Positions 28,642 to 58,198 of a stretch of 64,000 nucleotides of DNA are shown piece by piece (position 1 is the stretch's first letter; each line of letters opens with the position of its first letter). The position numbers and the translations under genes were made by a program. Below the pieces are notes generated by a model. That model was not told where the DNA came from. It was given only the letters and a program-made list of their open reading frames with translations, and ran no database searches. The stretch is from contig NW_025767293.1 in NCBI RefSeq assembly GCF_003918875.1, forward strand, positions 186,001 through 250,000, given 5' to 3'. Source of the DNA: Haliotis rubra. Lineage: Eukaryota.

Positions 28642-30646
28642 TTAAATATCATCTTCTGAAGATGCAGGATCTGGTTTCTTTGGCGATGGTTGGCCTGGTA
28701 ACCTCATTGCAAGTTTTTCCTGGAGTTGCTTCGTTACTTGTGAAAACGCCATGAAATTGACTGGAGTAGGACCAGATTTGGGTATTGCTTTGGTTTGTGT
28801 GGTGAGTTTGGAATCTTTTCGTGGTGGTGGAGGTGGTGGACCGCCTTTGCCTGCTGGTTTCAGTGATGAGGAAGTTGGCCGTTGACCAGAATTTTGATAG
28901 TCCCCATCAAAGGTCTGTAGATCGTCACTAGATGTGGAGCCTCGGCAGCTAGATGAGGAGCCTCGGTGGCTAGATGAGGAGCCTCGGCGGCTAGATGAGG
29001 AACCTCGACTATCTGAAAATGTGCTATCTCTGTCACCAAACCTATGATCAGCTAGCTTTGACCTGATAGGCTGTGGTGATATCTCGGGTGGTCCATGGCA
29101 GGCCTGTTTTGGCAGTGGTGGTAGTGGACGTTTCTGTATTGGTATCGTTTCATTTGAAGACATTTCATTTTGACGACCAGAACTGCACAAGGAAGTAAGG
29201 GATGGGTATTCTTTCACATCAGGTGGGTCTGATGGTTTATCCGTTTCTCTTAAGTTTCCAGGACTCTTGGTTAATTTTGGTATTGGAGGGAAAGAAGGCA
29301 GTTTGGGAACTGTTGATACCTCTTCATTTTCAGCACCCTTTTCCTTCATTCCAAGCAGTTTCTCCTTATTTTCATAGGTATCCGACAATCTCGGGATTGG
29401 TGGAAAAGATAAATCATCAACCTTAGGTTCTCTTTGACGTGAACGACGAGCATCCGAGAGGTTCCGCGAAAGATGACTGGTTTTGGCTTTTAGTGGCAGT
29501 CGTGGAAGTGTAGATGGTCCGGATGGTTGCATTTGACCACGAGTATAAGAGAACTGCCTTTTCTGGGACTCCATTTCAATACTTGTCAGTTCATCATATT
29601 CTGAAGACTGTGATGTTGTAGAAGCACGCCCAAAGTGAGCATCATGTGTTTTGGTAGTTTCGTTTGATGCTGGATGTAACTCGAGCAAGTTTCTTGAAAG
29701 AGGCAAGGTTTTCGTTTTAGGCAAGAGTGATACAGTGGATTTTCCTGCTGACCCCGGCAGATCACAGTCATCAAGAGATTCCTTATTATTCTTTGAGGAA
29801 AAATTATCACTGATCATATCAATGATGTTTTGAGACATTTCCTGGATATTTGGCACACCACTTTCCAATATGGGATGGGTAACGTCCTCTTCGGGTATGA
29901 ACATCCCTTCTGTTTCCATGGAAACAACTGAGCCAGCAGATGCGTACACGGACCCAAAGTCCGCATCTGCTGCGGGTGGCATGTCGAGCCAGGATTTTCT
30001 GAAAAGTGTAGACATTGCAGATTGACGTGAATTCGCATCTAATGATTCTCGAAGGATAACATCATCTCCCTCTTCCGGAGTAACTCGTGTGAGGACAATA
30101 TCCATGTTTTCGTCTTCATCAGGTACGAATGTGTCTGTTTTCTTAGTGTTGGAAAGGTACGCCATCTTGCTGGTTTCGAAAGTAGATACTGTGCTGTCTC
30201 CCCTGCTGTCGTCTACATGAACGTAATCATTTGTTAGATTTGAACTGACACTTCCACGTGCCAGGGCTCCTTTGTAGTTAGATTTAAAACGATTATCGCT
30301 TTTACGCCATCCACGACCGAGTTTCTTCAGTAGGATTCCGCTCAATGTTGAACATTTCTTTGGGGGTTGAGGGGGTTGAGGCCTACCAGTTACTGCAAAT
30401 TCTGTTACTGCTTTAATAGATTCTTCAGAAGATGCTGCACCACAAGAATCATTTGACACAGGCCTTTGTGCACCTAAATACTCATACGAATGACCGTCAC
30501 TCTCATTTGATGATGTGTCTGAGTTGCTTTCGCTTCTCTTCTGCTTTCTTAAGGGTACAGCATCACCCTGGTTCTCGTAGATTGCAGCAATGTCCAATAT
30601 GCTGAAGGACAGGTCATTCAGCCTTTGGTCTCGTTTGCAGCGTCTC
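28642..30646 (-). CDS. Adaptor A terminal exon (cytoplasmic tail)
   Basis: 2-kb uninterrupted ORF; acceptor ccttttcaaag; motifs YENQ, YEYL, YVHV, YDEL, YENK, YQNS, RPLPPLP, PPPPPPRK. Confidence 0.92.
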
Positions 30647-33060
30647 CTTTGAAAAGGTTGAAACAAGTCATATCAAGAAAGGTACCAACTATGTAAAATA
30701 GTTTTTTCTTTATACAGGATATACTATAACATACAAATTCAAAACATTTGTACAGATATACCAATAGAAGTATATACACACCGCGGTTCAAAGGCTACAA
30801 GGTGCTTTTAAGCTATGATTTTGAGAGACAGCTGTCTGGACTCGGTGATAAGAGTACTAGTATATGTGTGAGACATTTCACGAATCAAACAACACACTTT
30901 TGTGAAAATCACCACATAAAAGAGAAGCTAATCAATTACTTGTATGTTGTCACAGCGAATGTTCTCAGCAGTTTTCGTCTTGACAGGACGTCCAGTGAAC
31001 AATTTTAAAACAATTATTCAGTATTCTTTGGATCAAATTGTTCCTTTCTTGTGAGAATATATCTACTTCCTGTATAAAATGACAAGCTATTTGTACTTAC
31101 TTGGTAAACAACAGGATAGCCCATACGAGGAGGAGAAGCAGGATATATACGCCTATGAACCCCAGCGATATATATTCTGGAAAAGGAGTAAATAAAAAGG
31201 TACATGTGACATTTTGTAGAAACAACTAGCTACGTTAGAATCGGCCCTAATTTAATCAGATATACCTACTGGTTATACAAGGTTCGGTTGCATTTACATG
31301 ATTCTGAAAAAGGATTGGGTTTCTTTAAAACATATTTCAATCACCAGCTCTACTTTGTTAAAAAAATTCTGAAAAATCGAAATTGTGAAAACATTATTGA
31401 ATTCATTTGATGCTGAGTGCTGACAGGTTATAGGAACATTAAATCAAACAAGGAAGATTGACTGAACATTGTATCCACAACCCATAAAAACTCAAGAGTG
31501 TCATTTGTTATTAAAATATGCAACTGGTTAATAATCACTTTATTTGCATAATGGACGCTTCCACGTTATATACGATGGCGACCCCAAGGTTTCTGTTGAT
31601 AATGTCATGTAACGCGAATTTGTTAATTAACGGTATTTTGGAAAGTTATATTTTCTGTTACGCTTAACGATAATCCTGGAGCATCACACTTAGATACATA
31701 AAAGGAAGGAATATGAAACATTCAGCTCTAGAGTGCAATCACTCTTAGTTATCTAGAACCCGTGAAAGTCCGTGTTAGAATTGCTCTTTAGTAACCCATG
31801 CTTGTCGTAAGAGGCGACTAATAGGATCGGGTGGTCAGGCTCGCTGACTTGGCTGACACACGTCATCGGTTCCCAATTGCGTAGATCGATGCTCATGCTG
31901 TTGATCACTGGATTGTCTGGTCCAGACTCAATTATTTACAGACCTCCGCCATATAGCCGGGATATTGCTGAGTGCGGCGTAAAACTAAACTCACTCACTC
32001 TGACTAAGAGGGAATGTCCCGACTCATGAAACGTTAGATATATTCAAATGTACAACTTCCGGTTGTGGCATTTCGTCAAGGACAGTATTCCAGTTTTATC
32101 AAGGAGTGTCAGCATGATGTGTGAATGATGCATTTCTCTTATTTAACACTTCGGTGAATCCCATAAGTAAGTCATATGATGCTATGACAACATATACGAC
32201 TGAGCGAACTCCCACTCATGTTAAGTATCGTTAACACAAGCTGCAACATGTCATATCGATTGAGTACGGGTACGATACTATGATGCTATACATCGAGTGA
32301 CGACGTCAATGAGGAGACGTGTGTATGGCTGCCCAGGGTGGTCGCACTCACCATTGATGACGTGTCCCCTGTCTCATGTCTTATTATATGACTCTTTATG
32401 CACTTTTTGAATGAAATCTAATTTGTGTAATTTTTAATTTTGACCCCTGGACCCTTTCTAGGTACCGATCCACAAGGCGTATGAAGCGTTACGACCTGTG
32501 GTAATTCTATGGTGTATCATAGACTTCCGAATGTCGTAGCGTTCAGGACCCAGCATTACAAAGAATTTTCAGTCAAATTGTTGGAAAATGATTTCTGTTT
32601 GTAAAATAATTATCATAAATCTCACAAACATCTTTGTTTCTATTTTTTCGGTCAAGTGAGGTCGGTGATAACTTTCTTTTGCCCGGTAGCTTAGTAACTG
32701 TAACTTGAAAACGGTAAAAACACACACTACCAAACCTCTGCAACAATGTAACCTTGTCATCAACAGCTATGACACTCAGAAAATGAATAATTCGACTCGA
32801 ACTTGAGCTATCATTAATATGAATTTACGATTCAAACATATACAGCAAAACGAAATCCCATACATGTTTAGTATCGTAAAACAATTTGCAACATGTCACT
32901 TCACCTATGAGCAAAGTCATATAGATTGCTTTTCCATGATTCATATTTGGGCAACCATCAGCCCAAGTCTAATGCGAGGCATTAAGTTTGTCTAGTATAT
33001 TAAATAAGAACTCTACATACCCGGTCTCATGTCTTTAAAGGACCATCCGTCCCAAGACAT
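28642..33060 (-). CDS. Single-pass membrane protein with a tiny ectodomain and a long Tyr/Pro-motif tail (transmembrane-adaptor-like, adaptor A), 3 coding exons, about 706 aa
   Basis: Exon 33060-33021 MSWDGWSFKDMRP, G|gtatgt, with an in-frame TAG two codons upstream of the ATG. Exon 31176-31101 (E)YISLGFIGVYILLLLLVWAILLFT(K)|gtaagt. Exon 30646-28642 is the 674-aa ORF from RRCKR onward. Phases 1 and 2 are compatible. Confidence 0.85.
31101..31176 (-). CDS. Adaptor A transmembrane exon
   Basis: ccttttccag|...|gtaagt, 76 nt, hydrophobic stretch of about 23 aa. Confidence 0.88.
31431..32000. repeat. About 570-bp direct duplication, copy 2; includes SINE B at 31759-32000
   Basis: Matches 27898-28474; no TSD after this SINE. 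Confidence 0.92.
33021..33060 (-). CDS. Adaptor A first coding exon
   Basis: 40 nt, ATG with an upstream in-frame stop, phase-1 donor gtatgt. Confidence 0.7.
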
Positions 33061-33444
33061 CCTCTAGTCATCTTTACTTGGGCCGAGTGTTACTCAACCC
33101 TGTGTTAAACATACTTTCTGCTGTGATTATTTATTTCCCTCTTTACATTACAGTTAACGTTCCTATTCCGCTTAACAGGGAAATAAAGCATCAACGATAA
33201 GGAATGTTGTAGACTGAATTCATGTTTACAATGAGTGTGGACTTTATAAAATGTTAAACATAACCAACGTCTTCAGCAATTAAGTTCAATTTTACCTGCA
33301 CCGTTTTGTTTAAAAAATGAGGTATATTATACAAGGCCTGTGAACTGTTAATAGTACGGCAACATCTAATATGGTATTTCTTTCATTAAAGTGAGAAATG
33401 GTGAAGAGGTTTGATTTTGTAAAGGAAGATAGTTTTCAAAGTTT

Positions 33445-33645
33445 GAAAGAGAAATAACAAAGACAAGTGTAAGGCAACGTATATCCATCTGTTGTTTCAC
33501 ACTGAATGTCCAACATGGTCGGTGTTTCCAGTGAACAATTTCCTTATGTAGTGATCGCCCCCGAACACTGTGTCAGGGGCCAGTGTTAAGGAAATATAAA
33601 GCTCAGTCGAAACCGTCTCATTAATACATTGACCTGTGGTAGTGA
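33445..33645. repeat. About 200-bp duplicated element, copy 2
   Basis: Near-identical to 4529-4736. Confidence 0.9.
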
Positions 33646-33661
33646 CAGACGGAATTTCATA

Positions 33662-33829
33662 CGAGTGAGTGAGCGAGTTTAGCTTTATGCCACTGTCAGC
33701 AATATTACAGCAATATCTCAGCGGGAACACCAGAAATGGGCTTCACACATTGTACATATATGGGGAATAGAACCCGGGCCTTCGGCGTGACGAGCGAACA
33801 CTTTAACCACACGGCTACCCTCACCGCCC
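33662..33829 (-). mobile_element. SINE family A copy
   Basis: Aligns to the other A copies. Confidence 0.88.
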
Positions 33830-34467
33830 CACACAACGAAGTGATATTGCAGGATAAACGTTATGTTCTAAAAGAATAAGATGTGTGTGTTAAAAATTGA
33901 AGAGCAATCCTTAAACGTGACTTCATACGACAAGGTATTTGAACCTGGAATAATCACAAACCATGAACGATAACTGGTTTTAGCAACCCGTCTTGTAGAT
34001 ACCACTTGTATTGACTTGTAGTCTTGTAGTCATCACATGTGTTAACGTAAGTGAATGATAATGATTTTATGCCGCATACCTTTTATTCCGGCATATTACA
34101 TCACGGCGATTTCACCAGAAATGGACTTTACCTCGAACCCGTGTCTTGAGAGCTAGGAGTGAAAACCTAAACTACTATGTTACCAAACTAACACAGCGTT
34201 AACGTTAATTTGGTACGAGGAATAATATAACTCAAAGAATGAAGTCTTCTGGAAATATATATACTAATATATATACGTTTGGTGTTTTTCAGAAAAGAAT
34301 GCAATTCGCTAACAGAATAGAAAGCTGCGTCTTCAAGATGGAGGTTCAGAAAACAAATTAGGTTTGATGAGATTGCCGATTAAAACACAACTGGATGCTG
34401 ACGGCGTGGCAAAGGGGTTATCTTCGCGTGTGACTTGGATGACGTTTCTTCCTTACCAATCTCAGGA

Positions 34468-34730
34468 CACGTGTCTCCTGGTGTCAAGGTGAAGGTTACG
34501 TGTGTCTCCTGGTGTCAAGGTGAAGGTTACGTCACGCCATGTGTTCTCGATGGCGATAAAGGTGGTCAAGGTGAAGGTTACGTGTGTCTCCTGGTGTCAA
34601 GGTGAAGGTTACGTGTGTCAAGGTGAAGGTTACGTGTGTCTCCTGGTGTCAAGGTGAAGGTTACGTGTGTCTCCTGGTGTCAAGGTGAAGGTTACGTCAC
34701 ACCATGTGTTCTCGATGGCGATAAAGGTGG
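34468..34730. repeat. 31-bp minisatellite with a higher-order duplication
   Basis: Unit gtgtgtctcctggtgtcaaggtgaaggttac; spacer ccatgtgttctcgatggcgataaaggtggt present twice. Confidence 0.92.
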
Positions 34731-34908
34731 TAGCGTTGTGACGGATCCATACCGTACTGTTTCTGATGATTCCCTGAGCAGCCGACCTTTCCTCTAACCT
34801 GTCATAGTTGTTTGATAGGGATTCAGAAACACAACACATGCTCAGGACAAAATCGGAATCGTACACATATATTTCAGCACTATTAAACCAGACGATATGT
34901 TGCCAGAG

Positions 34909-35054
34909 TGAGTGAGTGAGTTTTACACCGCTTTTAGCAATATTGCAGCAATATCACGGCGGGGACATCGGAAATGGGCTTCAAACATTGTACCCATGTG
35001 GGGAATCGAACCCGGGCCTTCGACGCTTTAACTACTGGGCTACCCCATTTCCCC
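34909..35054 (-). mobile_element. SINE family A copy
   Basis: TSD atatgttgccagag. Confidence 0.9.
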
Positions 35055-35203
35055 ATATGTTGCCAGAGGTATGCAGAATTACATGATTGAAAACAATGCT
35101 ACTACGTATCGTGGTCTGGTAGCTACCCTCGTCTATCACATACATGTACTTGGGTTGAAATGCTCCTCAGTTCCATCCCCGGAAGACATACTTATATTAT
35201 ATA

Positions 35204-36479
35204 TACTGAACCGCTAAAGAAACGCGACACCGATAAAGGTTTCGTAAACCACACACTTTAATTCGCTCTAATTAACAATCAAAACGGAGGATTGCGTTCA
35301 AACTTGAGAGTTATGGTTGACACATTTTCGGGAATCACATTTAGAGTTCACACTACCCAAATCACCAAAAATGGTACCAATAAGATACCTCAAATTCAGT
35401 ATGGTGTGTCGCCTCCATGGGCATCGATGACGGCGTTGCGTCGTCTGTACATGGAATGAAGTTGTCGGCCTTGGTTGGAGGTCGTTCAGTCTTGTTTGAA
35501 TCTCAACCCAAAGGTGTTCTATTGGACTTAAATTCGGCCTGAGTGCAGGTCGGTGAAGGGGTTTGGATGCCATGTTGTCGTAGGAAGTCCAGTGTTGCTC
35601 TGGCAGTGTTGACACGAGCTTTATCTTGCTGGAAGATGTGATTTCTGTGACGTTTAAAAATGTGGTAGAAAGTGGGGTCTTATAACTTGGTCAGTATAAC
35701 TAGCAGCTGTCACGCCATTTCCTCGTCCTGGACCGAGATTCTGGAACACCACGGGGCCAACTCTCTGGTTCAGATAGATTGCACCTCACACCATGATGCT
35801 TGGACCACCCCTCGAGTCTCTTTCAACAATACCCGCATTGGATAACCGTTCCCCGCGCCTTCGCCATACTCTCACTCCGCCATCGGCTGTCGAAACACAA
35901 TATCGGCTTTCATCAGTAAAAGCACAGTTCTTCATTGTCGATAACGCCAATTGCGATGCCGAACTGCCCATTGCAGTCGGTTTTAGCGGTAACGAGCGGT
36001 GGGGACAGGACCCACCGCACTGCGTGGACGGTCTTGGATGCTGTTAATGGCTTGATACCGTTCCTGCAGTCGGTAGATTGTCCTAACATGAAATTAAAAT
36101 GATTGGCTACCCTCCGTGCAATCTGGCAAACTTGCAATCGTCCCAAGGCTTGGTTCCTTTGATCTCTCGTAAGTCGTACCATGGCGATTGTGTCAACACA
36201 AGAATGATTTCAAGTGAGTTTGGGACTCGCTTTCAATGGTAGGGTTGTCACGAAATGCACGTGCATTTTCATTTTCACGAATGTCATACGGAACCTTTTA
36301 CCACGTCTGTCTTTTTTGCTACGTTTGGTCGATATGCTTGTTCATCAGAGAAAACACTGACGTTGGTAATAACTGTCAATTTGGATTGAAAAACATGTTA
36401 ACTAAACGCTGCAATCATACAAAAACACCACATTTTGCATTTGGTTTTGTAAAGTCGCGTTTCTTTTTGCGGTTCAGTA
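35204..36479 (-). mobile_element. Tc1-like DNA transposon with a decayed transposase
   Basis: TIRs tactgaaccgc.aaagaaacgcgac at both ends, TA flanks. Fragments MVRLTRDQRNQALGRLQ (HTH), FTDESRY, QQD.AR and PNLSPIEHLW, broken by frameshifts. Confidence 0.92.
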
Positions 36480-36957
36480 TATTACCTTCGTTGCATGTAT
36501 GTGTTAATAACCTTTGCCTAGGCCCCTGTCAACGGATCTTGCAATGGGAAAAGGAGGATGACGTTTTTAGTTGACATTGCTGGTTTTCCCTGGTCCATTT
36601 GCCGCTGTTTCCTTTTGTGTCCGGTTTTATCAAATGCTCGAAACAGGTTAATCTCTTGCTTTGACATTATATGTTATCGCTGTGGAATTGTTTCTTTATT
36701 TTATCTCGTTCTATAACTTCGTGTTCATGTTTGTATGTATCGATAACATTGGTTTTAACGAGACTTACACTACGCGCGACAACTAAGTTCGACAACTGAC
36801 ACATATATTGTTCGAGTAATACCTAGTAGGGCAGAACATAATGTCCTATTCACAAGCATACACATTCAATCACGAGCAAATACGGATGTTAACAGGCGTT
36901 CGCAAGTTGTTTGTTTGTTGTTTGTCGCCAGCAATCGGCAATATTCCAGCTATATGG

Positions 36958-37127
36958 GGGCGGTGGGGTAGCCTAGTGGTTAAAGCGTTGGCTCGTCACG
37001 CCGAGGACCCGGGTTCGAATCCCCACATGGGTACAATGTGTGAAGCCTATTTCTGGTGTCCCCCGCCGTGATATTGCTGGAATATTGCTAAAAGCGGCGT
37101 AAAACCAAACTCAGTCAGTCAGTCAGT
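36958..37127 (+). mobile_element. SINE family A inserted into an antisense SINE B (36906-37200)
   Basis: TSD tccagctatatgg duplicates SINE-B sequence. Confidence 0.92.
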
Positions 37128-37512
37128 CCAGCTATATGGCGGCTGTCTGTACATGATCGAGTCTAGACCAGACAATCCAGTGATCAACAGCATGAGCATC
37201 CTGGTGAGCGTGTCCCATTTCGCCCGTCATGAAGGAACTCAGTACGTACTTGTATGTACCCAGGATGTCACAAGTACTCGTTGTCGGTAAACATGGGCAA
37301 CAATGTGGCGAAAACTGAAACCACAGGCAACGTTTAAATGTTTCCTTCTAAACTTCATCAAATGTGTCGTACTTTCATAGTATGGCATCGAAGATTCCAA
37401 AACAGAGTTGTGTAAATACAAGACTTAATTTCTGTCAGAAGTAAGTACCTTGTCATTTATATTTTGCCATTGAATTTGATTCTGTTACCAGTATGTTTAT
37501 GTAGTATGTTTC

Positions 37513-37612
37513 ATACATTAGTCCATTATCCACGTGTATATTCCATACATTAGTCCATTATCCACGTGTATATTGCATACATTAGTCCATTATCCACGTG
37601 TATATTGCATAC
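37513..37612. repeat. About 32-bp tandem repeat, 3 copies
   Basis: Unit catacattagtccattatccacgtgtatatt(c/g). Confidence 0.9.
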
Positions 37613-37956
37613 AACTAAAATGCTTATGCATTTGATAAGCTTGTTACTCGTCATTCACAACAACAACAGTGTAATAACAGTTCCTTACCGCTAACACCCG
37701 GTGTCATCACTGATTTTCAGTGCTCCATTAATGCTATTTTCAATGCCAGGTTGCCTTTACGCCATATGGCCAATGTTTCGCTGGATAATCGGAATTGGTT
37801 ACTCCTAGGCCTTGCCTTGGCGTTATGTAGATATTATCGACATTTAGAAATAGCATTGTGCGTATCTATTTTATTCGTTTCCTTATTATTTTTATTACTT
37901 TCATCATTTATGATGATGTCAAGCATGTACTGCATTTGCAACAATGGAACAGAAAT

Positions 37957-38075
37957 AGGGGCTCCTTTCACGAAGCAACCATTACTAAGGTTAACCTTAA
38001 CTCCCATTCTTTAACAGTGCACTAAGGTTACCTTAGTGACTTACGATCACCTTAGTCCTTCGTGAAAGGAGGCCC
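37957..38075. mobile_element. Small palindromic MITE
   Basis: ctcctttcacgaag...cttcgtgaaaggag; second copy at 21511. Confidence 0.78.
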
Positions 38076-38212
38076 TGGCTCACAAGTCCACAAGTTAAGG
38101 TCGATGTTCATAACGTGTCCCTATAAACATTTTTAATGCATGGTCCACTTTCATAATATTCACTCCCTATATGTCATCGGTGATCCATGTGAAGTATCTC
38201 CGGTTATCATAT

Positions 38213-38762
38213 ATACAAAGAACTTAGTTAAGCACCCCCTGATTTTTTGCAATGATAGGTTTTCAACACGTACATAAAACGTTTTCTGGCCCGTATGAAC
38301 CTTTGACCAATAAACCGACAAAATGGTTGGAATCAATGTTGATTGTATGGTGACAATTGCTCATTTTAAAAAAAAACACCGAGTGACTGGTTTACATAGA
38401 AATTTGTCTGTACAAGTATGGCCCTGGGATGTTTAATGTTGGATTTATTGGTGAATGTGAACATTCAAAATGTCATTTTGCGTGTCTTACACGATTCAAG
38501 GTCAATACCGAATATAACCTCCATGTGACAGCCAGCAGTCACCTCCTCATACCCCCTGCCAGCCTATTGATCCGCTTAAGGAGCAGTCTACGCCATTCCT
38601 CGTGTAAAGCAGCTTCCAACTGGGAACGGTTTTGTACAGGAGGATCCATTTGTTGCACACGACGACCAATCGTGCCCCAGATCAGTTCCAAAGGGTTCTG
38701 AACGGGGCTCATTGAAATCGTGAGATAGGTCATGGGGCGCTTAAGTTATTTCCAGTTGCATA
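38213..38762 (-). mobile_element. Internally deleted Tc1-like element
   Basis: Transposase C-terminus SPVQNPLELIWGTIGRRV...QLEAALHEEW...GMRR; imperfect TIRs ttaagc(a/g)cccc. Confidence 0.75.
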
Positions 38763-40071
38763 CACCCGTGGTATAAACCTGAATACCGTTCCTTTATTAG
38801 CATTATCATGGGGGTGGGGCCGCGGGGGTAGCCTGGTTGTGAAAGCATTTGCTCTTCACGCCGAAGGCCGGTTTCGATTCCTCAATTGCATACAATGTGT
38901 GAAACTCAAACCACTACAAAGGGCATTTGGCTGCCAAACAGTATGCCGTTTATTAAAACTTTCTCTAAGTTGTCAACGACGTCGCCACTACCACCAAGTA
39001 CAGATAAACCTGAAATAGGTAGGACTGATGCAATGTTAAAGGATAGCGTGTCACATTGATATTTCATGATCATCCTAAAAATCGCTAAAGTTAGGATTAA
39101 GCCGGTGTGCAAATGTAATCGATGATATTTTTCCGGTCACAAATTAATATATACAAATGTAAAAGGAGAGAAGTTCATTTCAAAACAATAATTTCCAAGT
39201 AATATTAGTATTCATATGAATATAAAAGAAAGAATGCTGCAGCGGACCAGAATATATAACTCCTGCCAGGTAAATGCAAATATTAAAACACAACTCCGAG
39301 TAAGAGTACAGTCAGTGCCACGCCCATTTTGAAAGTGCTAGTTTATCTTAAGATGATTCCATGATGTTTCGACAAAAGATAATAAACTCTCTTTTTTGAA
39401 ACTCAATATAATATATTCACATTGACATATTTTTGCTGATTACGGGTAAAGATGTGAAGTCTTACTAACTGCTCAGTATCATTATGTAATATTCTTAATA
39501 TTGGGACGAATCCACACAGCAACAAGGTCCTTTCACTTCTAAGACATCCCCCCAAAATTGTTTATGTACATACGTCCATTTGAATGGACATCCCAGCCCC
39601 ACCCCTCCTCCACTTTTCCCATATAAATCTAATGATCAATGTGACAGGATACATTTACGTATTCTCAGTGAGACGATTCCCTCTATATGAGAATAACGTG
39701 GTATCATGTCATATCCCACGGAGTCACGTACACACGAGTATCCATACACGTATTAACTAAAGAAAACAATGGGGCAAAACTGTTCACATCCGCGTAAAGT
39801 TGAGAAAAGTCGGCCGTGTACGAGAATACAACGGAAACGGAAAAGTGACAGGTGCATCCAAGAAATGTATTTTTAATTTTAGTCTGTCGACAAGTTGGGT
39901 TTCCGATATATTTTTGAAAAAGATATTTTACATAAGTAGCGAACTGTATCCAATTTTGCTATTGTTAAAAACACCTGGCATTGTAACTGTTAGTGCAGTC
40001 AAAATCAGACAGCGATATTATAGGCTGGTTTACATGACAGGACCAGAACCATTAAGTGAAGACTGACATGG

Positions 40072-40073
<2 letters not shown>

Positions 40074-40153
<80 letters not shown>

Positions 40154-40161
40154 GAGAGAGA
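40074..40161. repeat. (GA)n microsatellite
   Basis: Seen directly. Confidence 0.97.
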
Positions 40162-40196
40162 GGTGTTATATTAATTGCTTGTATTTTCATTTCCAG

Positions 40197-40284
40197 TGAA
40201 TAACATCATCATTGCATGGACAATTGCTGGGATTGGAATGGCCCTTGCCTGTTTCTTCCTATTACTATATCTATGCTTGAAATG
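40197..40284 (+). CDS. Adaptor B transmembrane exon
   Basis: 88 nt, phase 1 to 2, hydrophobic helix ending in CLKC. Confidence 0.87.
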
Positions 40285-40449
40285 GTAAGTCTTTCCAAAT
40301 AAATCTTGATTTGTGAAATACGTTTTCCCTATGGCATCAACAGATAATATACGCACACTGGAAATGATACCTTTCACAAAGTCGTAATAACTAAAAACGA
40401 GACAAAAGTGTGACATGGATTCTGTTACGGTTTAAATCAGTGACCAACC

Positions 40450-40480
<31 letters not shown>

Positions 40481-41874
40481 GAATTTGTAACGCGCCAATC
40501 TCACGCCAGCTGGTATGCTCATGGCGCTACAAGTAAAGTTATTTCTTGCTTTTGTTTTAAGTTTTACGTTGTTTGTGATAGTATATGCCGTATGTATTCA
40601 TTTCTTATTCCAGTAAAGACAAGTGTCACGGATGTTCAAGATTTGCATCAGCCTTTCCATCAGATATCGCTACCTTCTACAGGCAAAACTCTTGGGTGGA
40701 CTGTGACCACGAGTACGAGCGTATAAGCTTACAGGACAGGTCCCGGGAGAAAGACACTGTATGCAGCAGTCTACAACCGCATCATGAGGCGCGTCCGGGT
40801 GGGGAGAAAGGAGAAGACTATATAGATCCCCGAGCTTCATCATCAACAGAACATGTCGTAGATGATGTTAGGATATCCAGGTTATCCCATCTTCTGAGAA
40901 CATCGTTCTGGAGTAAAACCAACTCTGAGGAGGTTTTAGAATCTGACCACATACCAACATGTGGAAGCAGCGGGCAAAGGAGAACTCGAAGCTGCCGCAA
41001 GGTGAAGTCAACTGATATTTGTTCGAATACTCTCACTGCGGGGCATTTCATACCAGACTCGGGGGAGATTCGTGCACGGGGACTACCATCCGGAACAGCA
41101 GAAACAATGCCGGATGTCACAGACAGCATGGTTGACATTTTTCAAGAAATCTTCAATCCTTCCAACAACACTCTTAGAAGCCTGCTTCTCAGAACAATTC
41201 ACCCCGCAACTGAAAAAAATAAAAGTCTATCCAAACGTCTCTCTAAGTCTGAGACAGATGTCACCATTGCCAAAACATTCAGATCGTTCGGCAATACAGA
41301 CTACGATCCCTCTACAGACCCACAAATACAAAGTGGCGATGATGACCATTATGTCGCTGTCTCCGATATCAGAGTAACGCCTATACCAAAACGACGAAAA
41401 TCATTGTCCCGGAAGAAACACATCCTTGATGATAAGCAAACGGAAAACGAGTCTGAGCTCAGAAAATTGCCCGGCAGAAGTTTAATTAAATATATTACAA
41501 TCCCCATGTTCGAGGAAAGAAGAGAAGCAAGTATGCCTGTTCCGAGATCCAAACCCATGAGCCCCAGGCAGTGTCAACCAAGCAGCATCTTCAAGACTTC
41601 CTCTGACAAGAAAGGAGGTGGTGAATCTCCCACAAATCGTATGATAGAGGAACACGTACAAGCACCTGCGATGCATCTTGACACCTATGAAAATGAAATC
41701 CTAAGTGGAGTAGGCAGTCAAGAGAATCCGCAAAGCTTTCATGGATCCTTCAGGCGGAGTGTGCAAAAAGCAAGAAATGCTACATGTCTAGACGGACAAG
41801 CAAAAACAGGAAAAGAATATTCGAACGTAAGGATGGTCGTGAAGAATTTGTCATGCTCAATCGAAAACATTTGA
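40197..41874 (+). CDS. Transmembrane-adaptor-like protein (adaptor B), paralog of adaptor A, about 449 aa; 5' exon uncertain
   Basis: Exon 40197-40284 (x)NNIIIAWTIAGIGMALACFFLLLYLCLK(C), acceptor ttttcatttccag, donor gtaagt. Exon 40614-41874, acceptor tttcttattccag, in frame with the 429-aa ORF. Confidence 0.85.
40614..41874 (+). CDS. Adaptor B terminal exon (cytoplasmic tail)
   Basis: 1.26-kb ORF; motifs YERI, YIDP, YVAV, IKYITI, YENE, YSNV. Confidence 0.9.
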
Positions 41875-45640: not shown

Positions 45641-48600
45641 CAGTAGTAGTAGTTATTTGCTTTATCTAACGTCGCACGCACAACTAAGGTATTTCGGCGA
45701 CGGGGTAGTACACTTATTAAGAAATGAGGGGGAACAAAATATAGAAATTTTGAAAGAGTGGTGTTACTACCCCAAAAAGATTGTATTAGTGTTTGTTGAA
45801 TTTGGTAGAGTGGATAATGTTTTCCTATTCATTGCAAGTTATAATTGAATTTATCTATTATTGTGTTGTTAACTTTATTTGTTAGGTCTGTTTTGGAGTT
45901 AGGTATTTCTATTTTGTTTGGCAGCTTGTTCTGCCATTTCGTTGCCATGGGCTCCGATATGTGACGAGACCCAGATAAAATGTACTTGATTATTTTTATT
46001 TTGGTGGTATAGTATTCTTCTGTATATGTTATTGATTAGATCTAGTCTTTTTGTTGTAGAGTAATTTTTGAGAGCTTGTATGGAGCTTAAGGAATCCGTT
46101 AAAAAATGCAGATGGTAGTGCTTGTTTGTTTGCAAATCCTGAACTATGGCTGCGAGTTCTTCTGTGAAGATACTGGAGTTTGCTGGGAGATTATAGGATT
46201 GTTTCTGGCTTTTTTTGGATTTGTAGATACCAAAACCAGTATTATCATTTTGGTCCTTGGATCCGTCAGTATAGATGTAAAGATTATCTTGTGGATTGTA
46301 ATTTTGTTGTATGAATTCTTGCACTGTGAATTTATTAAGTATATAGTTTTCAGTAAGTTTTGTGTTGGCCAATATTTTTGGCAGTAATGCTGGAGGAAGA
46401 GATTTGTAATATGGGTTTGTATTATATTCTGTTGTATATAAATCAAGTTGTTGTTTCATTTCCTGTATTTTTTGTCCAAAAGGTTTTGGGTATTTGCCTT
46501 TATTGATAATGATTTTATTTTTATTTTTAAGAGATGTATAGTAGTTTTCAGTTTTGTTTGTAATGGGGTTGTTAAGGGATCAGTTACATATTTCATTGTA
46601 CATCTTTCCCATTGGAGAGTGAGGTCTAGTTCCCCGCATTCTACCAATAATGCTTGGAGGGATGTACCTGGGAAGGCCCCAGTTTTACATTTAAGTGCTT
46701 GGAATTGAATGAAACTGAGTTTGTTTATATGTGTTTGTGCCATATCTTGAAATATTTCGCAGCCATAGACTAATTGAGATTTGATGAGTGATTTATATAG
46801 TAATAGTAATGTTTGTTTGTTGCTAACCTATTTACTTTGTGATGAGTATTTAATAATGTTGAGCTCTGACTTGCATTATTCTTGTATGAATTGAATGTGT
46901 TTGTTCCATGTTAAGTGCTGGTCAAGGATTAGACCTAGAAATTTTACTGTATCTGATTGCTGTAACTTTTGTTTGTTAATATAAAGATGTACATTTTGTT
47001 TTCTTCGATGTTGTGCTTTGAATACTACAGTTGTTGTTTTAGTGGTAGAGAGTTGGAACCTTCATTGGTTGGCCCAGTTTTCAATATGGTTAAGTGTAGC
47101 TTGAATTTGTTTTTGTGTATATTTTTTCATTTTTCATTAACCCATATTGCTCCATCGTCGGGAAACTGGGATTTGTTTATGTTTTCACTGAGTTTGTTGA
47201 ATATATCATCAACCATAACATTGAAGAGAGTGGGTGAGATGATACTTCCCTAGAGTGTGCCATTTTCTAGTGTACATTAAACGCCAAAAGAAACGTTACC
47301 CCCCTTCCTGAATGACGTAGCTACCTATCTTCAACTGGTGTTGTGATGCGTGGACGTCCTCTTCTTGGTCTGTCTACGGGGACCCCAGTCTGTCTGAAGC
47401 CCTGACTCAGTTTTATATAACCGTGATACGACCCCGCCTGCGCCATTACAATGGCTCGTTTTCTCTCTTCAGCTGTTAATCGGGGCACAGTTCTCTTACT
47501 TGTGTATAATATCATGCATTCTAGGCTCTCTTTATAACCTATATAATCATTCTACATGTGAAATGGAAGCAAATACTGCTTAAATATTGCTGCGTTTTGG
47601 CGATTGATCATTGCTATGTATTAACAGAAAATGGAAAAATGTTACTTTGCAAGCAAAAAGTTTAACAAAGATAATTGTAGATGTTCCCAAACATTTGTTC
47701 ACAATATGAAAGACACGTTTTACTTGTTTTCACAATTGCAATTCAGCAGAAAATGTTTTAAAAGACTGAAATCATAGGAATGATTATTTTACATTTTACA
47801 CACTCTGCAACAGTTGTTTCTTGTTTAAATACATTGTAGTTGAAAAACGGTGACTTTAAAAGGGTTAATCTTTGTCTCAACGCGGAATTTTATTTAAACC
47901 TTTCTTTTGGACATCTAAATCACTGTTATTAGTTTATTTCGGCATGGACGAAAATAGGACAATTTAACTCTTCTGAAAAAGATGTATTTCACCTAAATAT
48001 GAATGCATTTGAGAAATTTTTTCGTGATTTGCATAAAGCTGTGTTTATAAGCTTTCTTGCAAACTAATACCTTCTTAAATATATTTGATAGTTTTTAAGT
48101 AATTCATAATTGTAGGAGGGTAACGTTTCTTTTGGCATTTTGTGTATAGTTTTGCGTCTATGGAGACTTTAAAGTCTCTGCCTGTTAGAAAGGCTGATAC
48201 ACAATTTAGAAGTGCCCCTTTTAAACCATCTTTTGTACTTTTTGGATGACACCCCCTCTCCGGAGCATATCAAAGGCCTTGGGGAAATCCAAAAAGACTG
48301 CAAATGTGTATTTTTTGTATTTTGTGCAGTTCTGATTTAGTTATGGATTTGTGCTAGATGATCTATGGTGGAGCGATGTTTGAGGAAGCCTGATTGAGTT
48401 ATTGTGTAAGGCGGTTGTTAACCATACCCTCCATGGTTTTGCATATGTTAGATGTAAGAGATATTGGCCGATATGATTCGGCTTTGTTTACGTCTTGGCC
48501 TTGTTTGTGTACGGGTATGATAAGGGAGTGTTTCCAGGCTTTTGGTATTTGACCGTTTATCCAAGCTGTATTATAAAGTTTTAGTAGTTGGTTTATTAAT

Positions 48601-50400
48601 GGTGTAGGGGCGTATTTTAACATGATATAGCTGGCATTATCTTGACCTGGGCCAGTACCTTTTTTTTGGTTGATAACGTTGTAAGGTTCCAATTCAATAA
48701 AAGGTATATTGTAAATTAGATGCGTTTGGGGGTTTTGTAGATTGTAGGCTGCTGCTTTTTGAGATTTGTTTTGAAAATGTTGACAGTCATTTGCAGTTCT
48801 ACTAGTTCTTGTTGTTTGTTTCTATTGTTGTTTATAACTGGAATGTATTGTTTTCTATTTTTATCCCTCATTGAGTTTATTTTTTTCCAGACTTTTCTGG
48901 AATTTGTTTTGAAGCTTAGGTTGCTGCAGAAATTGTGCCAGTCCTGGTCTCTGGCCTTTTGTATTATTTGTTTTACATTTTGTCTAGCTGCCTGTGCCAG
49001 AGGAATTTTATTTTTATCTTTGCGTGCTTGTGGGAGATCTAAGTGCCACATCCGTAATGAATTCAACCAAAGTATTGAAATTGGGTTGGTTGTAAGAGCT
49101 GTGACCTGTTGTTTGGTACAGGTCATTGGACTGATTGATTTGGTGTATTTTGAGTAGTTTAGTCGTCTTGCAGCATTCGATTTGTTTGTGCTTTTCACTT
49201 TCTTTTGTGGGTTTATTTTGTTTTTCTTTGTAAGTGCTCAAAGCTGATGTTTGAAATGTTACTGGTTGAGGTTTTCCTTTATTTTGTGATTTCTCATGCT
49301 GTACCAGAGGTTTTTTCAAACTCAGAGAGAAGTGTTTGATGTTTTGTTTATCCCTGGAATCATTTATAGAAAGATCCATTTTGAGTAGTACCTTGTTACT
49401 GTTTGGAGTTGAGGTGTTTGGTTTTTCCCGATTTAGATCAATAGACTGATTGTATCTATCTTGTGTGTGGGTTTTATGATAGTTGTTGTTTGCCTGTTTA
49501 GTGTATTTGGTTTTCTTGGTTACATGTCTGTTGAGTTCAGCTGTGAGCTGTTGTTTATATCGACACTTATGGGAAAGTGAGCTATGGCCTGATATCCGGC
49601 AATGGATGCAGGAAAGACAAGCTTTACGTTTATCGAATGTATGGTTATTTCTGCTGCATTTAGTGCAATGTTGGTTTTCTGTACAATCTTTTTGAATATG
49701 GTCATATTGGAGACACTTTGTACATTGTGTATTTTTTTAAGGTGAGGTTCTACCTTGCGATCAATGATGCTAGCAATGGTATATTTGTTGTCAGGCTAGT
49801 GCCTTGGAAGGCAAGAACTACATAGTTGGTTGGTTTTTCTTTTGACATGATTCTGTTGGCAGAAAGAGTTTAGGTTTGTGTTCTGTTGTTGTTGGCTGTT
49901 TGGACGAGAGAATCTAGTTGTTGTTGTGTTATTGTTGGGTCTAGTTGTATAACCCCTTTTATTTGTTGACTCAAGTGAGGTGTTACATTTTTATCTGGAA
50001 TGTTTCTGATTTTGTTTATTGCTTTGTAGTTTGGTGCAAAAGCTTTTTGTGTGAACTCGATGAGATATCCATGACCACAGTTTTAAGTTTAGCAGGTGGT
50101 ACTCAATTCTGGCTAAGAGCCACACCCAAATTGGTCTACTATTAAGGTTTGAGATAGGCTTATATCCTTCAGTGTACTCGTAATGAGTACTTGTGTGTGG
50201 CTTACTGGTTTGTTGGGGTTTAGAATGTCCTTAGTGATATTGACAGAACTGTCAGATGATACTGATGTATCTGTAAGGGTATGATTATTGATTTTGTTTT
50301 CTTTTGTTGCTTGGTCTTGTTACTTGGGTGAAGTGAAACTCCTGTTGAGGTTCTGGTTTAGTTTTAACATTACTGAAGTCCAGAAGTCTTGATCTTGGTC
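45641..50400 (-). mobile_element. Decayed I/Nimb-clade LINE (ORF1 zinc knuckles, RT, RNase H)
   Basis: ORF1 CTKCLQYDHIQKDC plus two further Cys/His knuckles near 49550-49730. RT motifs YRPISLTSNICKTME, AVFLDFPKAFD, GSIISPTLFNVMVDD, FPDD, KFLG. RNase H motifs IYTDGSK, TDSLS, WVSSHIGAHGNEMAEQAAK. Many stops. 5' boundary approximate. Confidence 0.9.
47275..48144 (-). mobile_element. Non-autonomous Tc1-like element nested in the LINE RT
   Basis: TIRs ...gccaaaagaaacgttaccc, TA TSD; HTH remnant PRLTAEERKRAI...DRPRRGRPRITT. Confidence 0.92.
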
Positions 50401-57937: not shown

Positions 57938-58198
57938 NNNNNNNNNNNNNNNNNNNNNNNNNNNNNNNNNNNNNNNNNNNNNNNNNNNNNNNNNNNNNNN
58001 NNNNNNNNNNNNNNNNNNNNNNNNNNNNNNNNNNNNNNNNNNNNNNNNNNNNNNNNNNNNNNNNNNNNNNNNNNNNNNNNNNNNNNNNNNNNNNNNNNNN
58101 NNNNNNNNNNNNNNNNNNNNNNNNNNNNNNNNNNNNNNNNNNNNNNNNNNNNNNNNNNNNNNNNNNNNNNNNNNNNNNNNNNNNNNNNNNNNNNNNNN
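57938..58198. other. Assembly gap (N run)
   Basis: Seen directly. Confidence 1.

What the first reader, a model, noticed from the sequence alone, without database searches (positions are those of the whole stretch)
28642..41874. Head-to-head pair of ectodomain-less, tyrosine-rich membrane proteins resembling LAT/PAG-type transmembrane adaptors in an invertebrate
Seen: both long anonymous ORFs splice, via phase-matched GT-AG junctions, onto small TM exons absent from the ORF track. Neither shows a signal peptide or extracellular-domain exon. Both have juxtamembrane Cys and long Ser-rich tails with repeated acidic-context Tyr motifs. Established: a short ectodomain, one TM helix, palmitoylated Cys and multiple pTyr docking sites define vertebrate TRAPs (LAT, NTAL, PAG1, LIME, SIT, TRIM). 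Inference: this is an unannotated family of invertebrate immune or signalling adaptors, probably convergent with vertebrate TRAPs rather than orthologous.
Basis: partly seen in the sequence, partly recalled or inferred. Interest (0 to 1): 0.9.

Follow-up and report, generated by a model that had tools for sequence, protein, structure and literature searches.

The report
Abalone membrane-anchored disordered scaffold gene pair
Two neighbouring abalone genes, already in RefSeq as unnamed proteins, each encode one membrane helix at the very start and a long floppy tail with a few conserved docking motifs; they look like vertebrate LAT/PAG-type adaptors, but tyrosine signalling or an immune role is not shown.

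Summary
The window is Haliotis rubra. Gene A (28642-33060, minus) equals RefSeq LOC124255109 (706 aa). Gene B (37440-41874, plus) equals LOC124255100, so the genes are annotated, though unnamed. Both encode a 3-16 residue outer stub, one strongly hydrophobic helix, a basic Cys-containing juxtamembrane stretch and a 420-670 residue tail that AlphaFold2 models as disordered.

The head-to-head pair is conserved in four Haliotis species. It evolves under purifying selection (dN/dS 0.24-0.45). No relative was found outside Haliotis in a search of 1.84 billion representative proteins, and no Pfam family matches, including LAT, PAG, LIME1 and SCIMP.

The tails are not tyrosine-rich (1.4-1.9% Tyr). 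Tyrosines as a class are no better conserved than other residues: 8 of 12 in A against 65% overall, 3 of 8 in B against 53%. A subset is invariant: two YxN, YVxV and SxYDEL in A, and three membrane-proximal Tyr in B. The best-conserved elements are proline motifs (RPLPPLP, PPPPPPRK, two FPPIP) and non-tyrosine blocks.

My reading is lineage-restricted membrane-anchored scaffolds, TRAP-like in architecture. Phosphotyrosine dependence is plausible, and there is no evidence for immunity.

The parts
33021..33060 (-). Gene A, first coding exon: ATG at 33060, 13 codons plus 1 nt. Only the last 3 codons are coding in H. asinina and H. rufescens.
   Evidence: The spliced translation equals P0001. An in-frame TAG lies two codons upstream of the ATG. 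The orthologous exons start at a downstream ATG.
31101..31176 (-). Gene A, TM exon (76 nt). It is preceded by a phase-1 intron and followed by a phase-2 intron, and encodes the 24-residue hydrophobic helix.
   Evidence: AF2 pLDDT is 75-85 over the helix.
28642..30646 (-). Gene A, terminal exon: 667-residue predicted disordered cytoplasmic tail plus stop codon.
   Evidence: dN/dS 0.24-0.34. pLDDT below 50.
30631..30645 (-). A: basic juxtamembrane RRCKR with invariant Cys42, a candidate palmitoylation site.
30568..30594 (-). A: DIAAIYENQ, a membrane-proximal Y[EQ]N invariant in 4 species. B has DIATFYRQN at the same distance from its TM helix.
30202..30360 (-). A: most constrained block (residues 135-187), a basic amphipathic stretch ending in NDYVxVDD.
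   Evidence: dN/dS 0.11-0.12 in the sliding window; alignment.
29785..29916 (-). A: conserved acidic/hydrophobic block (residues 283-326) with FIPEED and a low-confidence helix at 306-318.
29587..29604 (-). A: S[EG]YDEL, an ITIM-like [SILV]xYxx[ILV] motif invariant in 4 species.
29272..29406 (-). A: two conserved copies of SFPPIP[RK] (EVH1-ligand-like) flanking the non-conserved DTYENK. That Tyr is Phe in H. rufescens and H. cracherodii, and the Asn is Ser in H. asinina.
29110..29130 (-). A: RPLPPLP, identical to the class I SH3 ligand consensus and invariant.
   Evidence: Literature: PMC11842026, PMC7703624.
28816..28905 (-). A: invariant [DE]YQN (a YxN motif) followed by invariant PPPPPPRK (class II SH3 / profilin-type ligand).
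   Evidence: (dN/dS 0.09).
28687..28752 (-). A: invariant C-terminal 22-residue segment with a low-confidence predicted helix (672-684).
37440..37440 (+). Gene B, last base of the 5' exon. It supplies the A of the split start codon A|TG and is followed by a gtaagt donor. The start of this exon is not determined.
   Evidence: The CDS range of the 449-aa RefSeq isoform begins here. Sequence. The reconstruction equals P0006. H. rufescens has the same arrangement.
38980..39018 (+). Decayed homologue of the 39-nt mini-exon that encodes SPLPTSTVKPET in H. rufescens. In H. rubra the AG acceptor reads GA and the TG reads CG, so the exon is skipped.
40197..40284 (+). Gene B, TM exon (88 nt), with phase-1 and phase-2 flanking introns as in gene A.
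   Evidence: AF2 pLDDT 88-90.
40614..41874 (+). Gene B, terminal exon: 419-residue predicted disordered tail plus stop codon.
   Evidence: dN/dS 0.39-0.45. pLDDT below 50.
40615..40635 (+). B: juxtamembrane KDKCHGC. The two Cys of KCKDxC are invariant. The CxxC is present in H. rubra, H. rufescens and H. cracherodii but reads CLGW in H. asinina.
40663..40830 (+). B: the three invariant membrane-proximal tyrosines (YRQN, YERI, YIxP).
40870..41196 (+). B: conserved non-tyrosine blocks (RISRLSHLL..SFWS, HFIPDSGE, SMVDIFQEIF..LRSLLL) with low-confidence helices.
41338..41415 (+). B: DDDHYVAV..PKRRKSLSRK block. The Tyr is Phe in H. asinina.

Best explanation
Shown. These are two real, divergently oriented Haliotis genes, RefSeq LOC124255109 and LOC124255100. 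Each encodes a protein with a 3-16 residue, non-conserved N-terminal stub, one 24-25 residue hydrophobic helix, a basic Cys-containing juxtamembrane segment, and a long tail without a predicted fold. The tail evolves under moderate purifying selection, with islands of strong constraint.

Inferred. The helix acts as a reverse signal-anchor (type III, N-terminus out, C-terminus in), which follows from the positive-inside charge balance. The juxtamembrane Cys residues are palmitoylated. The cytoplasmic tail works as a multivalent docking scaffold built from short linear motifs.
- In A, constitutive contacts would run through the invariant RPLPPLP (class I SH3 ligand), PPPPPPRK (class II SH3 or profilin) and two FPPIP motifs (EVH1-like).
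- Also in A, inducible SH2 contacts would use the invariant tyrosines: two YxN of Grb2/Drk type, YVxV and SxYDEL.
- B would use three invariant membrane-proximal tyrosines and two amphipathic helices.

On this reading the proteins work like vertebrate transmembrane adaptors (LAT, PAG, LIME, SCIMP) or viral mimics (A36R, UL135) without being related to them. The tyrosine-dependent part is the weakest link.
For: - Gene models and junctions.
- The pair and its orientation are conserved in H. rufescens, H. asinina and H. cracherodii.
- dN/dS is 0.24-0.34 for A and 0.39-0.45 for B at dS 0.26-0.66.
- One hydrophobic segment; C-flank charge +2 to +4 against N-flank 0 or -1.
- The ecto stub varies from 3 to 16 residues through start-codon shifts and loss of a mini-exon.
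- AF2 gives pLDDT above 70 only for the TM helix. The Atlas model of A has pLDDT 0.41.
- Invariant motifs.
- RPLPPLP is the class I SH3 consensus and binds Fyn SH3 at 8.2 uM: PMC11842026 and PMC7703624.
- Language-model neighbours of both proteins include LIME1, PAG, SCIMP, A36R and UL135.
- TRAP definition: PMC4861716 and PMC2213442.
Against: - Tyr makes up only 1.4-1.9% of the tails and is not preferentially conserved: A 8 of 12 against 0.648 overall, B 3 of 8 against 0.527. Flank conservation is not significant.
DTYEN is lost in both genes, KEYSNV is lost, the YVAV Tyr is Phe in H. asinina, and the CxxC of B is lost in H. asinina.
- Enrichment of YxN and of an acidic residue at -1 is modest and fades in H. 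rufescens.
- Short motifs arise by chance in disordered sequence.
- I saw no transcript, expression, topology, palmitoylation or phosphorylation data.
- B keeps 7 of its 10 Cys invariant along the tail, which is unusual for a cytosolic disordered region.
- The Atlas scores are in the range the tool itself calls leads only.
Confidence: 0.45

Rival explanations
1. These are membrane-anchored disordered proteins whose function has nothing to do with phosphotyrosine. They might be a cytoskeletal or trafficking tether, or a scaffold regulated by Ser/Thr phosphorylation. The Tyr motifs would be chance features of a fast-evolving tail.
For: - Tyr density is low and Tyr is no better conserved than average.
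- The most constrained windows are the basic amphipathic block, the proline motifs and the C-terminal helix.
- Pro is among the best conserved residue classes: 0.77 in A, behind only W and I, and 0.79 in B, the highest.
- Ser is 13-15% of the tails, with many basic-Ser contexts.
Against: - Seven Tyr in A and three in B are invariant across all species available. Two of the A sites keep the YxN context exactly.
- YxN and an acidic residue at -1 exceed shuffles in H. rubra (p 0.01-0.03).
- The A block with the lowest dN/dS ends in NDYVxVDD.
Confidence: 0.3
2. The topology is reversed or the protein is secreted. The N-terminal hydrophobic segment would be a type II anchor or an uncleaved signal, and the Ser-rich tail would be extracellular or luminal (mucin-like).
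For: - The hydrophobic segment lies at the extreme N-terminus.
- The tails are Ser-rich.
- Seven of ten Cys in B's tail are invariant.
- There are 2-7 N-x-S/T sequons per tail.
- I have no direct topology data.
Against: - The C-flank carries +2 to +4 net charge against 0 or -1 on the N side.
- The hydrophobic run is 24-25 residues, too long for a signal-peptide core.
- Invariant cytosolic-type ligands (RPLPPLP, PPPPPPRK) make no sense outside the cell.
- The number of sequons is not conserved between species.
Confidence: 0.1
3. The gene models are 5'-truncated. The real proteins would be type I receptors whose signal-peptide and ectodomain exons lie upstream and were missed.
For: - Both TM exons are entered through a phase-1 intron, as is common for receptor ectodomain exons.
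- One RefSeq model (H. cracherodii gene B, P0007) carries an extra 80-residue N-terminal stretch.
- I could not inspect RNA-seq.
Against: - RefSeq models from four species agree on short N-termini.
- An in-frame stop lies just upstream of A's ATG within the same exon in H. rubra. H. asinina also has one, by my reading of the exon sequence printed.
- The split start codon and its donor are conserved between H. rubra and H. rufescens.
- Only 4.4 kb separates the two first exons, and its ORFs have no Pfam domain.
- The H. cracherodii extension has no hydrophobic signal and no Pfam hit, and it is absent from H. rubra and H. asinina DNA.
Confidence: 0.07
4. The ORFs are non-functional: pseudogenes or chance ORFs.
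For: There are no homologues outside one genus and no known domain.
Against: ORFs of 2.0 kb and 1.3 kb stay intact in four or five species at dS up to 0.66, with dN/dS well below 1.
Confidence: 0.03

Closest known systems
PAG1/Cbp (vertebrate transmembrane adaptor)
   Same: PAG is a type III layout with a 16-residue outer stub, a TM helix followed directly by a Cys motif and basic residues, and a roughly 400-residue tail with 10 Tyr plus proline-rich SH3 ligands (PMC2213442). Gene B of H. rufescens also has a 16-residue stub. Tail lengths and Tyr counts are comparable: 8-12 Tyr in 419-667 residues.
   Different: There is no sequence similarity and no hit to the Pfam PAG model even at E 10. No Csk-type Y[ST][AS][VI] site is present. 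Nine of PAG's 10 Tyr sit in YxxV/L/I contexts, against 4 of 12 in A and 4 of 8 in B. Raft association, phosphorylation and Csk binding are untested.
LAT / NTAL (LAT2) / LAX / GAPT: Grb2-recruiting TRAPs
   Same: They share the tiny ectodomain, the juxtamembrane Cys, and YxN (Grb2-type) motifs in acidic context. Members of this functional class also lack sequence homology with one another (PMC4861716).
   Different: LAT has nine highly conserved tyrosines (PMC4861716). Here only two YxN in A and none in B are conserved across species. The tails are 2-3 times longer and much poorer in Tyr. There is no Pfam match. These genes occur in one gastropod genus only.
Viral N-terminally anchored adaptors: vaccinia A36R (OPG164) and HCMV UL135
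   Same: Both are among the nearest language-model neighbours of both abalone proteins (scores 0.81-0.90). From general knowledge, they combine an N-terminal TM anchor with a disordered tail that recruits SH2/SH3 adaptors and actin regulators.
   Different: There is no sequence homology. The viral proteins are much shorter. The similarity scores are below the tool's own threshold for anything more than a lead.
Cytoplasmic tails of type I receptors such as semaphorin 6A
   Same: This is a high-ranking language-model neighbour cluster for both proteins (0.87 and 0.90), and it too is a disordered proline-rich tail after a TM helix.
   Different: Those proteins carry large ectodomains. The abalone genes have none in four species' models.

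Membership tests
TRAP class (functional/architectural class; PMC4861716) | Extracellular part of only a few residues, with no signal peptide | tested here: met
   Stubs are 14, 4, 4 and 4 residues for A and 3, 3 and 16 for B. They vary by start-codon shifts and loss of a mini-exon. One outlier model has an unconserved 80-residue extension.
TRAP class (functional/architectural class; PMC4861716) | Single TM helix with a long cytoplasmic tail (N-out, C-in) | tested here: inconclusive
   A single TM helix and a long tail are shown. The orientation is only inferred from the positive-inside charge balance.
TRAP class (functional/architectural class; PMC4861716) | Juxtamembrane palmitoylation motif (most but not all TRAPs) | tested here: inconclusive
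   Conserved Cys residues lie 2-9 residues after the helix: A Cys42, and B KCKDxC. The CxxC of B is lost in H. asinina. Acylation itself cannot be tested here.
TRAP class (functional/architectural class; PMC4861716) | Several conserved tyrosine motifs that dock SH2 proteins once phosphorylated | tested here: inconclusive
   Motifs exist and a subset is invariant: A has 7 of 12 across 4 species, B has 3 of 8. As a class, Tyr is not enriched and not better conserved than average. Phosphorylation and binding cannot be tested.
TRAP class (functional/architectural class; PMC4861716) | Acts downstream of immune or other receptors; expressed in the relevant cells | not testable with these tools
   No expression data were reachable. 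The only Logan contig is genomic because it retains the intron. No paper mentions these loci.
PAG, LIME1, SCIMP, LAT sequence families (Pfam) | Significant match to the family profile | tested here: not met
   hmmscan of all orthologues against Pfam-A at E up to 10 returned none of these families. A profile search of 1.84 billion representative proteins found only Haliotis.
ITAM-bearing adaptors (DAP12 / FcR-gamma type) | Yxx[LI]-x(6-12)-Yxx[LI] | tested here: not met
   The regex finds no ITAM in any species of A or B.
One gene family comprising A and B (paralogy) | Significant sequence similarity between A and B | tested here: inconclusive
   BLASTP gives E 0.03. hhalign gives E 0.0047 with the TM segment and E 0.11 for tails only. 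Five of 100 column shuffles reach the observed score. Smith-Waterman shuffles give p 0.08-0.7. In favour of paralogy: the same exon plan and intron phases, adjacency, and a shared DIAxxY at the same distance from the TM helix.

The most novel reading that the evidence does not exclude
The pair is a convergently evolved, lineage-specific invertebrate counterpart of vertebrate transmembrane adaptors. Palmitoylated, ectodomain-less scaffolds would be tyrosine-phosphorylated by Src-family kinases and would recruit Grb2/Drk-, Shp2- and Ena/VASP-type partners. That would show that the TRAP design arose independently outside vertebrates. It might act together with the receptor tyrosine phosphatase gene that lies next to gene A in H. 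asinina.
Probability: 0.2. Interest if true: 0.6.

Novelty: new member of a known kind. Interest (0 to 1): 0.33.

Why it matters
Transmembrane adaptors of the LAT/PAG type are treated as a vertebrate device for organising immunoreceptor and Src-kinase signalling. Metazoans in general have Src, Csk and Grb2 (PMC3492796 for Src and Csk), but I found no description of an invertebrate membrane scaffold of this design. If these abalone proteins prove to be phosphotyrosine scaffolds, they would give an independent, experimentally tractable example of the same solution. They would also give a handle on how Src-family signalling is organised at molluscan membranes.

As the evidence stands, they are two genus-restricted orphan membrane proteins with disordered tails. 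That is a common kind of gene, and motif resemblance alone does not establish the function. The practical value of this report is a corrected gene structure and a short list of invariant motifs to mutate.

Tried and rejected
- Distant homologues. Word-index searches with both tails and with the B alignment, an exhaustive profile search with the A alignment, viral contigs for both and metagenome contigs found nothing outside Haliotis.
- Pfam at permissive thresholds gave only sub-threshold noise (Vpu, Caskin Pro-rich, DUF2718).
- Transcript evidence. The single Logan contig encoding a B orthologue (DRR299178) retains the intron, so it is genomic.
- Structure. AF2 on both alignments gave only the TM helix with confidence, so I ran no fold search.
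- A-B paralogy by BLASTP, hhalign and shuffles was borderline at best. One hhalign shuffle script timed out.
- Ectodomain exons in the 4.4 kb between the genes and in B's first intron: no ORF there has a Pfam hit.
- The neighbour as a phosphatase in this window: no PTP signature motifs appear in any frame, and the neighbour's ORFs have no Pfam hit.
- Literature: no paper names these loci. None of the top-ranked hits pairing 'transmembrane adaptor protein' with mollusc terms used that phrase.
- I rejected the ITAM, ITSM, YxxM and Csk-site readings because the regexes found none.
Full report
**Identity of the window.** The 674-aa ORF at 28642-30666 (minus) is 100% identical to NCBI 'uncharacterized protein LOC124255109 [Haliotis rubra]' (P0001, 706 aa). 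That protein lies on a 689,454-bp contig of assembly GCA_003918875.1. The 429-aa ORF at 40585-41874 (plus) belongs to LOC124255100, with isoforms X1 (P0006, 449 aa) and X2 (P0004, 435 aa). Both genes are therefore annotated but carry no name or function. No paper in the library mentions them.

**Check of the observation, gene A.** Joining 33060-33021, 31176-31101 and 30646-28642 on the minus strand gives a 2121-nt CDS whose translation equals P0001 exactly. Both introns are GT-AG with pyrimidine-rich acceptors. The 76-nt middle exon encodes a 24-residue hydrophobic helix followed by KRRCKR.

**Check of the observation, gene B.** The last base of a 5' exon there (A, followed by gtaagt) completes a start codon with the TG that opens the TM exon. 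My reconstruction equals P0006.

H. rufescens has the same split start codon but splices through an extra 39-nt mini-exon encoding SPLPTSTVKPET. Its H. rubra homologue at 38980-39018 has lost the AG acceptor and the TG, and is skipped.

**The outer stub is short and not conserved.**
- For A it is 14 residues in H. rubra but 4 in H. asinina, H. rufescens and H. cracherodii. The upstream ATG of H. rubra is closed by a stop in H. asinina and mutated in H. rufescens, while the exon itself is homologous.
- An in-frame TAG sits two codons before the H. rubra ATG.
- For B the stub is 3 residues in H. rubra and H. asinina and 16 in H. rufescens.
- One model, H. cracherodii P0007, adds 80 basic residues encoded in the intergenic DNA. 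That stretch has no hydrophobic signal and no Pfam hit. It is 90% conserved in H. rufescens DNA, where RefSeq does not use it, and it is absent from H. rubra and H. asinina.
- ORFs between the two genes and in B's first intron have no Pfam domain.

**Topology and disorder.** Each protein has a single segment with 19-residue Kyte-Doolittle mean 2.5-2.85. Nothing beyond residue 60 exceeds 0.92. The C-terminal flank carries +2 to +4 net charge, against 0 or -1 on the N side. By the positive-inside rule (established knowledge) this predicts N-terminus out and tail in the cytosol. That is inference, not measurement.

AlphaFold2 on the orthologue alignments gives pLDDT 75-90 for the helix and below 50 for nearly everything else, with mean pLDDT 37 and 34. 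The ESM Atlas model of A has pLDDT 0.41. The alignments are shallow, so 'disordered' means 'no confident fold'. Low-confidence short helices coincide with conserved blocks: A 306-318 and 672-684, and H. rufescens B 125-138, 215-222 and 228-237.

**Conservation and selection.**
- The head-to-head arrangement is present in H. rufescens and H. cracherodii.
- It is also present in H. asinina, where B is an intact ORF that is not among the called genes. Its TM exon there uses a GC donor.
- A fifth B sequence comes from a Logan contig that still contains the intron, so it is genomic DNA and not a transcript.
- Nei-Gojobori estimates on the terminal exons give dN/dS 0.24-0.34 for A and 0.39-0.45 for B at dS 0.26-0.66. 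These are real coding genes under moderate constraint.
- In A the strongest constraint (dN/dS about 0.1) falls on residues 135-187, a basic amphipathic block ending in NDYVxVDD, and on the C-terminal 100 residues with [DE]YQN, PPPPPPRK and an invariant 22-residue segment.

**The tyrosine test.**
- Tyr makes up 1.4-1.9% of the tails. This is below a typical proteome average of about 3% (general knowledge) and a little below PAG's 10 in 397 (PMC2213442). 'Tyrosine-rich' is wrong.
- Across three species, 8 of 12 H. rubra Tyr in A are invariant, against 64.8% of all residues (hypergeometric p 0.58). In B it is 3 of 8 against 52.7% (p 0.89).
- The ±3 flanks of Tyr are not significantly better conserved (p 0.15 and 0.36).
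- Adding H. cracherodii removes one more A site, where YKGAL becomes FKGAL.
- A subset is invariant in every species. In A these are Y[EQ]N at residue 62, YExL at 93, YVxV at 180, YAS at 273, S[EG]YDEL at 389, YPSL at 519 and YQN at 622. In B they are YRQN, YERI and YIxP, all within 75 residues of the membrane.
- In H. rubra, YxN (3 in A, 2 in B) and an acidic residue at -1 (5 of 12, 4 of 8) exceed composition-preserving shuffles (p 0.01-0.03). In H. rufescens the same tests give p 0.09-0.31.
- The DTYEN site shared by A and B in H. rubra, which looks striking in one genome, is lost in other species in both genes. KEYSNV is also lost, and the YVAV Tyr of B is Phe in H. asinina.
- No ITAM, ITSM, YxxM or Csk-type site exists.

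**Non-tyrosine motifs are the better conserved signal.** Pro is among the best conserved residue classes: 0.77 in A, behind only W and I, and 0.79 in B, the highest. A carries an invariant RPLPPLP. This is literally the class I SH3 consensus (PMC11842026), and as a peptide it binds Fyn SH3 with Kd 8.2 uM (PMC7703624). A also carries an invariant PPPPPPRK (class II PxxPx[RK]) and two conserved SFPPIP[RK] copies.

FPPIP resembles the Ena/VASP EVH1 ligand FPPPP (PMC7703624). That it fits the broader FPx-hydrophobic-P consensus is my recollection and was not tested here. A also repeats F[VI]P[DE]ED, and B has HFIPDSGE.

**Homology.** Nothing outside Haliotis was found in any of these searches:
- word-index searches;
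- an exhaustive hmmsearch of the A profile against 1.84 billion representative proteins, which returned one hit, its own cluster;
- viral and metagenome scans;
- Pfam at E up to 10.

Membership in the LAT, PAG, LIME1 or SCIMP sequence families is therefore tested and not met. TRAPs are a class defined by architecture and function, and its members lack mutual sequence homology (PMC4861716). The relevant comparison is therefore 'works like'.

**Are A and B paralogues?** Sequence evidence is borderline:
- BLASTP gives E 0.03.
- hhalign gives E 0.0047 when the TM helix is included. It aligns DIAAIYENQ with DIAsIYRQN and HSYEYL with HEYERI.
- hhalign on tails only gives E 0.11, a score reached by 5 of 100 column shuffles.
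- Smith-Waterman shuffles give p 0.08-0.7.

In favour of paralogy are the identical exon plan (tiny 5' coding part, TM exon between a phase-1 and a phase-2 intron, one large terminal exon), adjacency conserved in four species, and the same spacing of the first Tyr from the helix. I rate paralogy at about 55-60%.

The two first exons are 4.4 kb apart with transposon-like debris between them. This is not a compact bidirectional promoter.

**Language-model neighbours.** Independently for A and B, the ESM Atlas feature search lists the same classes: a semaphorin-6A tail cluster, vaccinia A36R, HCMV UL135, LIME1, PAG, SCIMP, C1orf185 and TMIE. Scores are 0.77-0.91 with 121-167 shared features, which the tool itself rates as leads. 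This says the proteins look like N-terminally anchored, disordered adaptor tails. It does not show kinship or function.

**Interpretation.**
- Shown: two real, genus-restricted genes for N-terminally anchored proteins with tiny, labile outer stubs, conserved juxtamembrane Cys, and long tails that lack a predicted fold but contain invariant short motifs.
- Inferred: type III topology, palmitoylation, and a scaffold role through SH3/EVH1-type proline ligands plus a handful of SH2-type tyrosine sites.
- I give about 0.45 to that scaffold model as stated and about 0.2 to a genuinely phosphotyrosine-driven TRAP analogue. An immune role gets no more than the base rate.
- The main rival (0.3) is a membrane tether unrelated to phosphotyrosine. 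Reversed topology (0.1), 5'-truncated receptor models (0.07) and non-functional ORFs (0.03) are less likely, for the reasons given in the rivals section.

**Novelty and score.** The genes are already in RefSeq, and the architecture class is known. A lineage-restricted orphan membrane protein with a disordered tail is a common kind of gene. The candidate assignment to the TRAP-like class in a mollusc is new but rests on motif resemblance, and it fails the class-level conservation test. I score interest at 0.33. I did not examine it, and it is not independent support.

Noticed in passing
window about 20667 downwards (minus strand); L003:22045-23779: The next gene downstream of gene A on the same strand starts near window 20667 (a 594-aa RefSeq product that runs off the locus). 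Its H. asinina counterpart is a 1297-aa receptor-type tyrosine phosphatase with EGF repeats and two Y_phosphatase domains. No PTP signature lies inside this window. Adjacency to putative Tyr-motif scaffolds may be coincidence.
   Followed up: partly
window 40068-40150: A long (GA)n microsatellite lies about 45 nt upstream of gene B's TM exon acceptor.
   Followed up: no
window 45899-46459 (-) and 48716-49198 (-): The 186-aa ORF has an RNase H domain (PF00075, E 5.6e-15) and is probably a retroelement remnant. The 160-aa ORF nearby has no Pfam hit. The 46-50 kb region shows strong GC and AT skew.
   Followed up: partly
window 35298-36182 (-), 38539-38733 (-): ORF fragments between the two genes and in B's first intron look by eye like Tc1/mariner transposase pieces. 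None reaches Pfam E 0.01.
   Followed up: partly
L006:10001-10243; L004:7445-7687: The H. cracherodii RefSeq model of gene B starts with an 80-residue arginine-rich extension encoded in the A-B intergenic DNA. The stretch is 90% conserved in H. rufescens but absent from H. rubra and H. asinina. It is a possible mis-annotation or a lineage-specific exon.
   Followed up: partly
L003:654-2250 (-): H. asinina has an intact gene B orthologue (TM exon with a GC-AG intron, 416-residue tail) that is not among the genes called in that locus.
   Followed up: yes
window 57938-58198: A run of N, either an assembly gap or masked. Left untouched.
   Followed up: no
window 29785-30130 (-) and 41041-41067 (+): A conserved unnamed motif F[VI]P[DE]ED occurs twice in A (residues 212-218 and 288-294) and once in B as HFIPDSGE. 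It gives the best tail-to-tail hhalign match (E 0.11). I know of no binding partner.
   Followed up: partly
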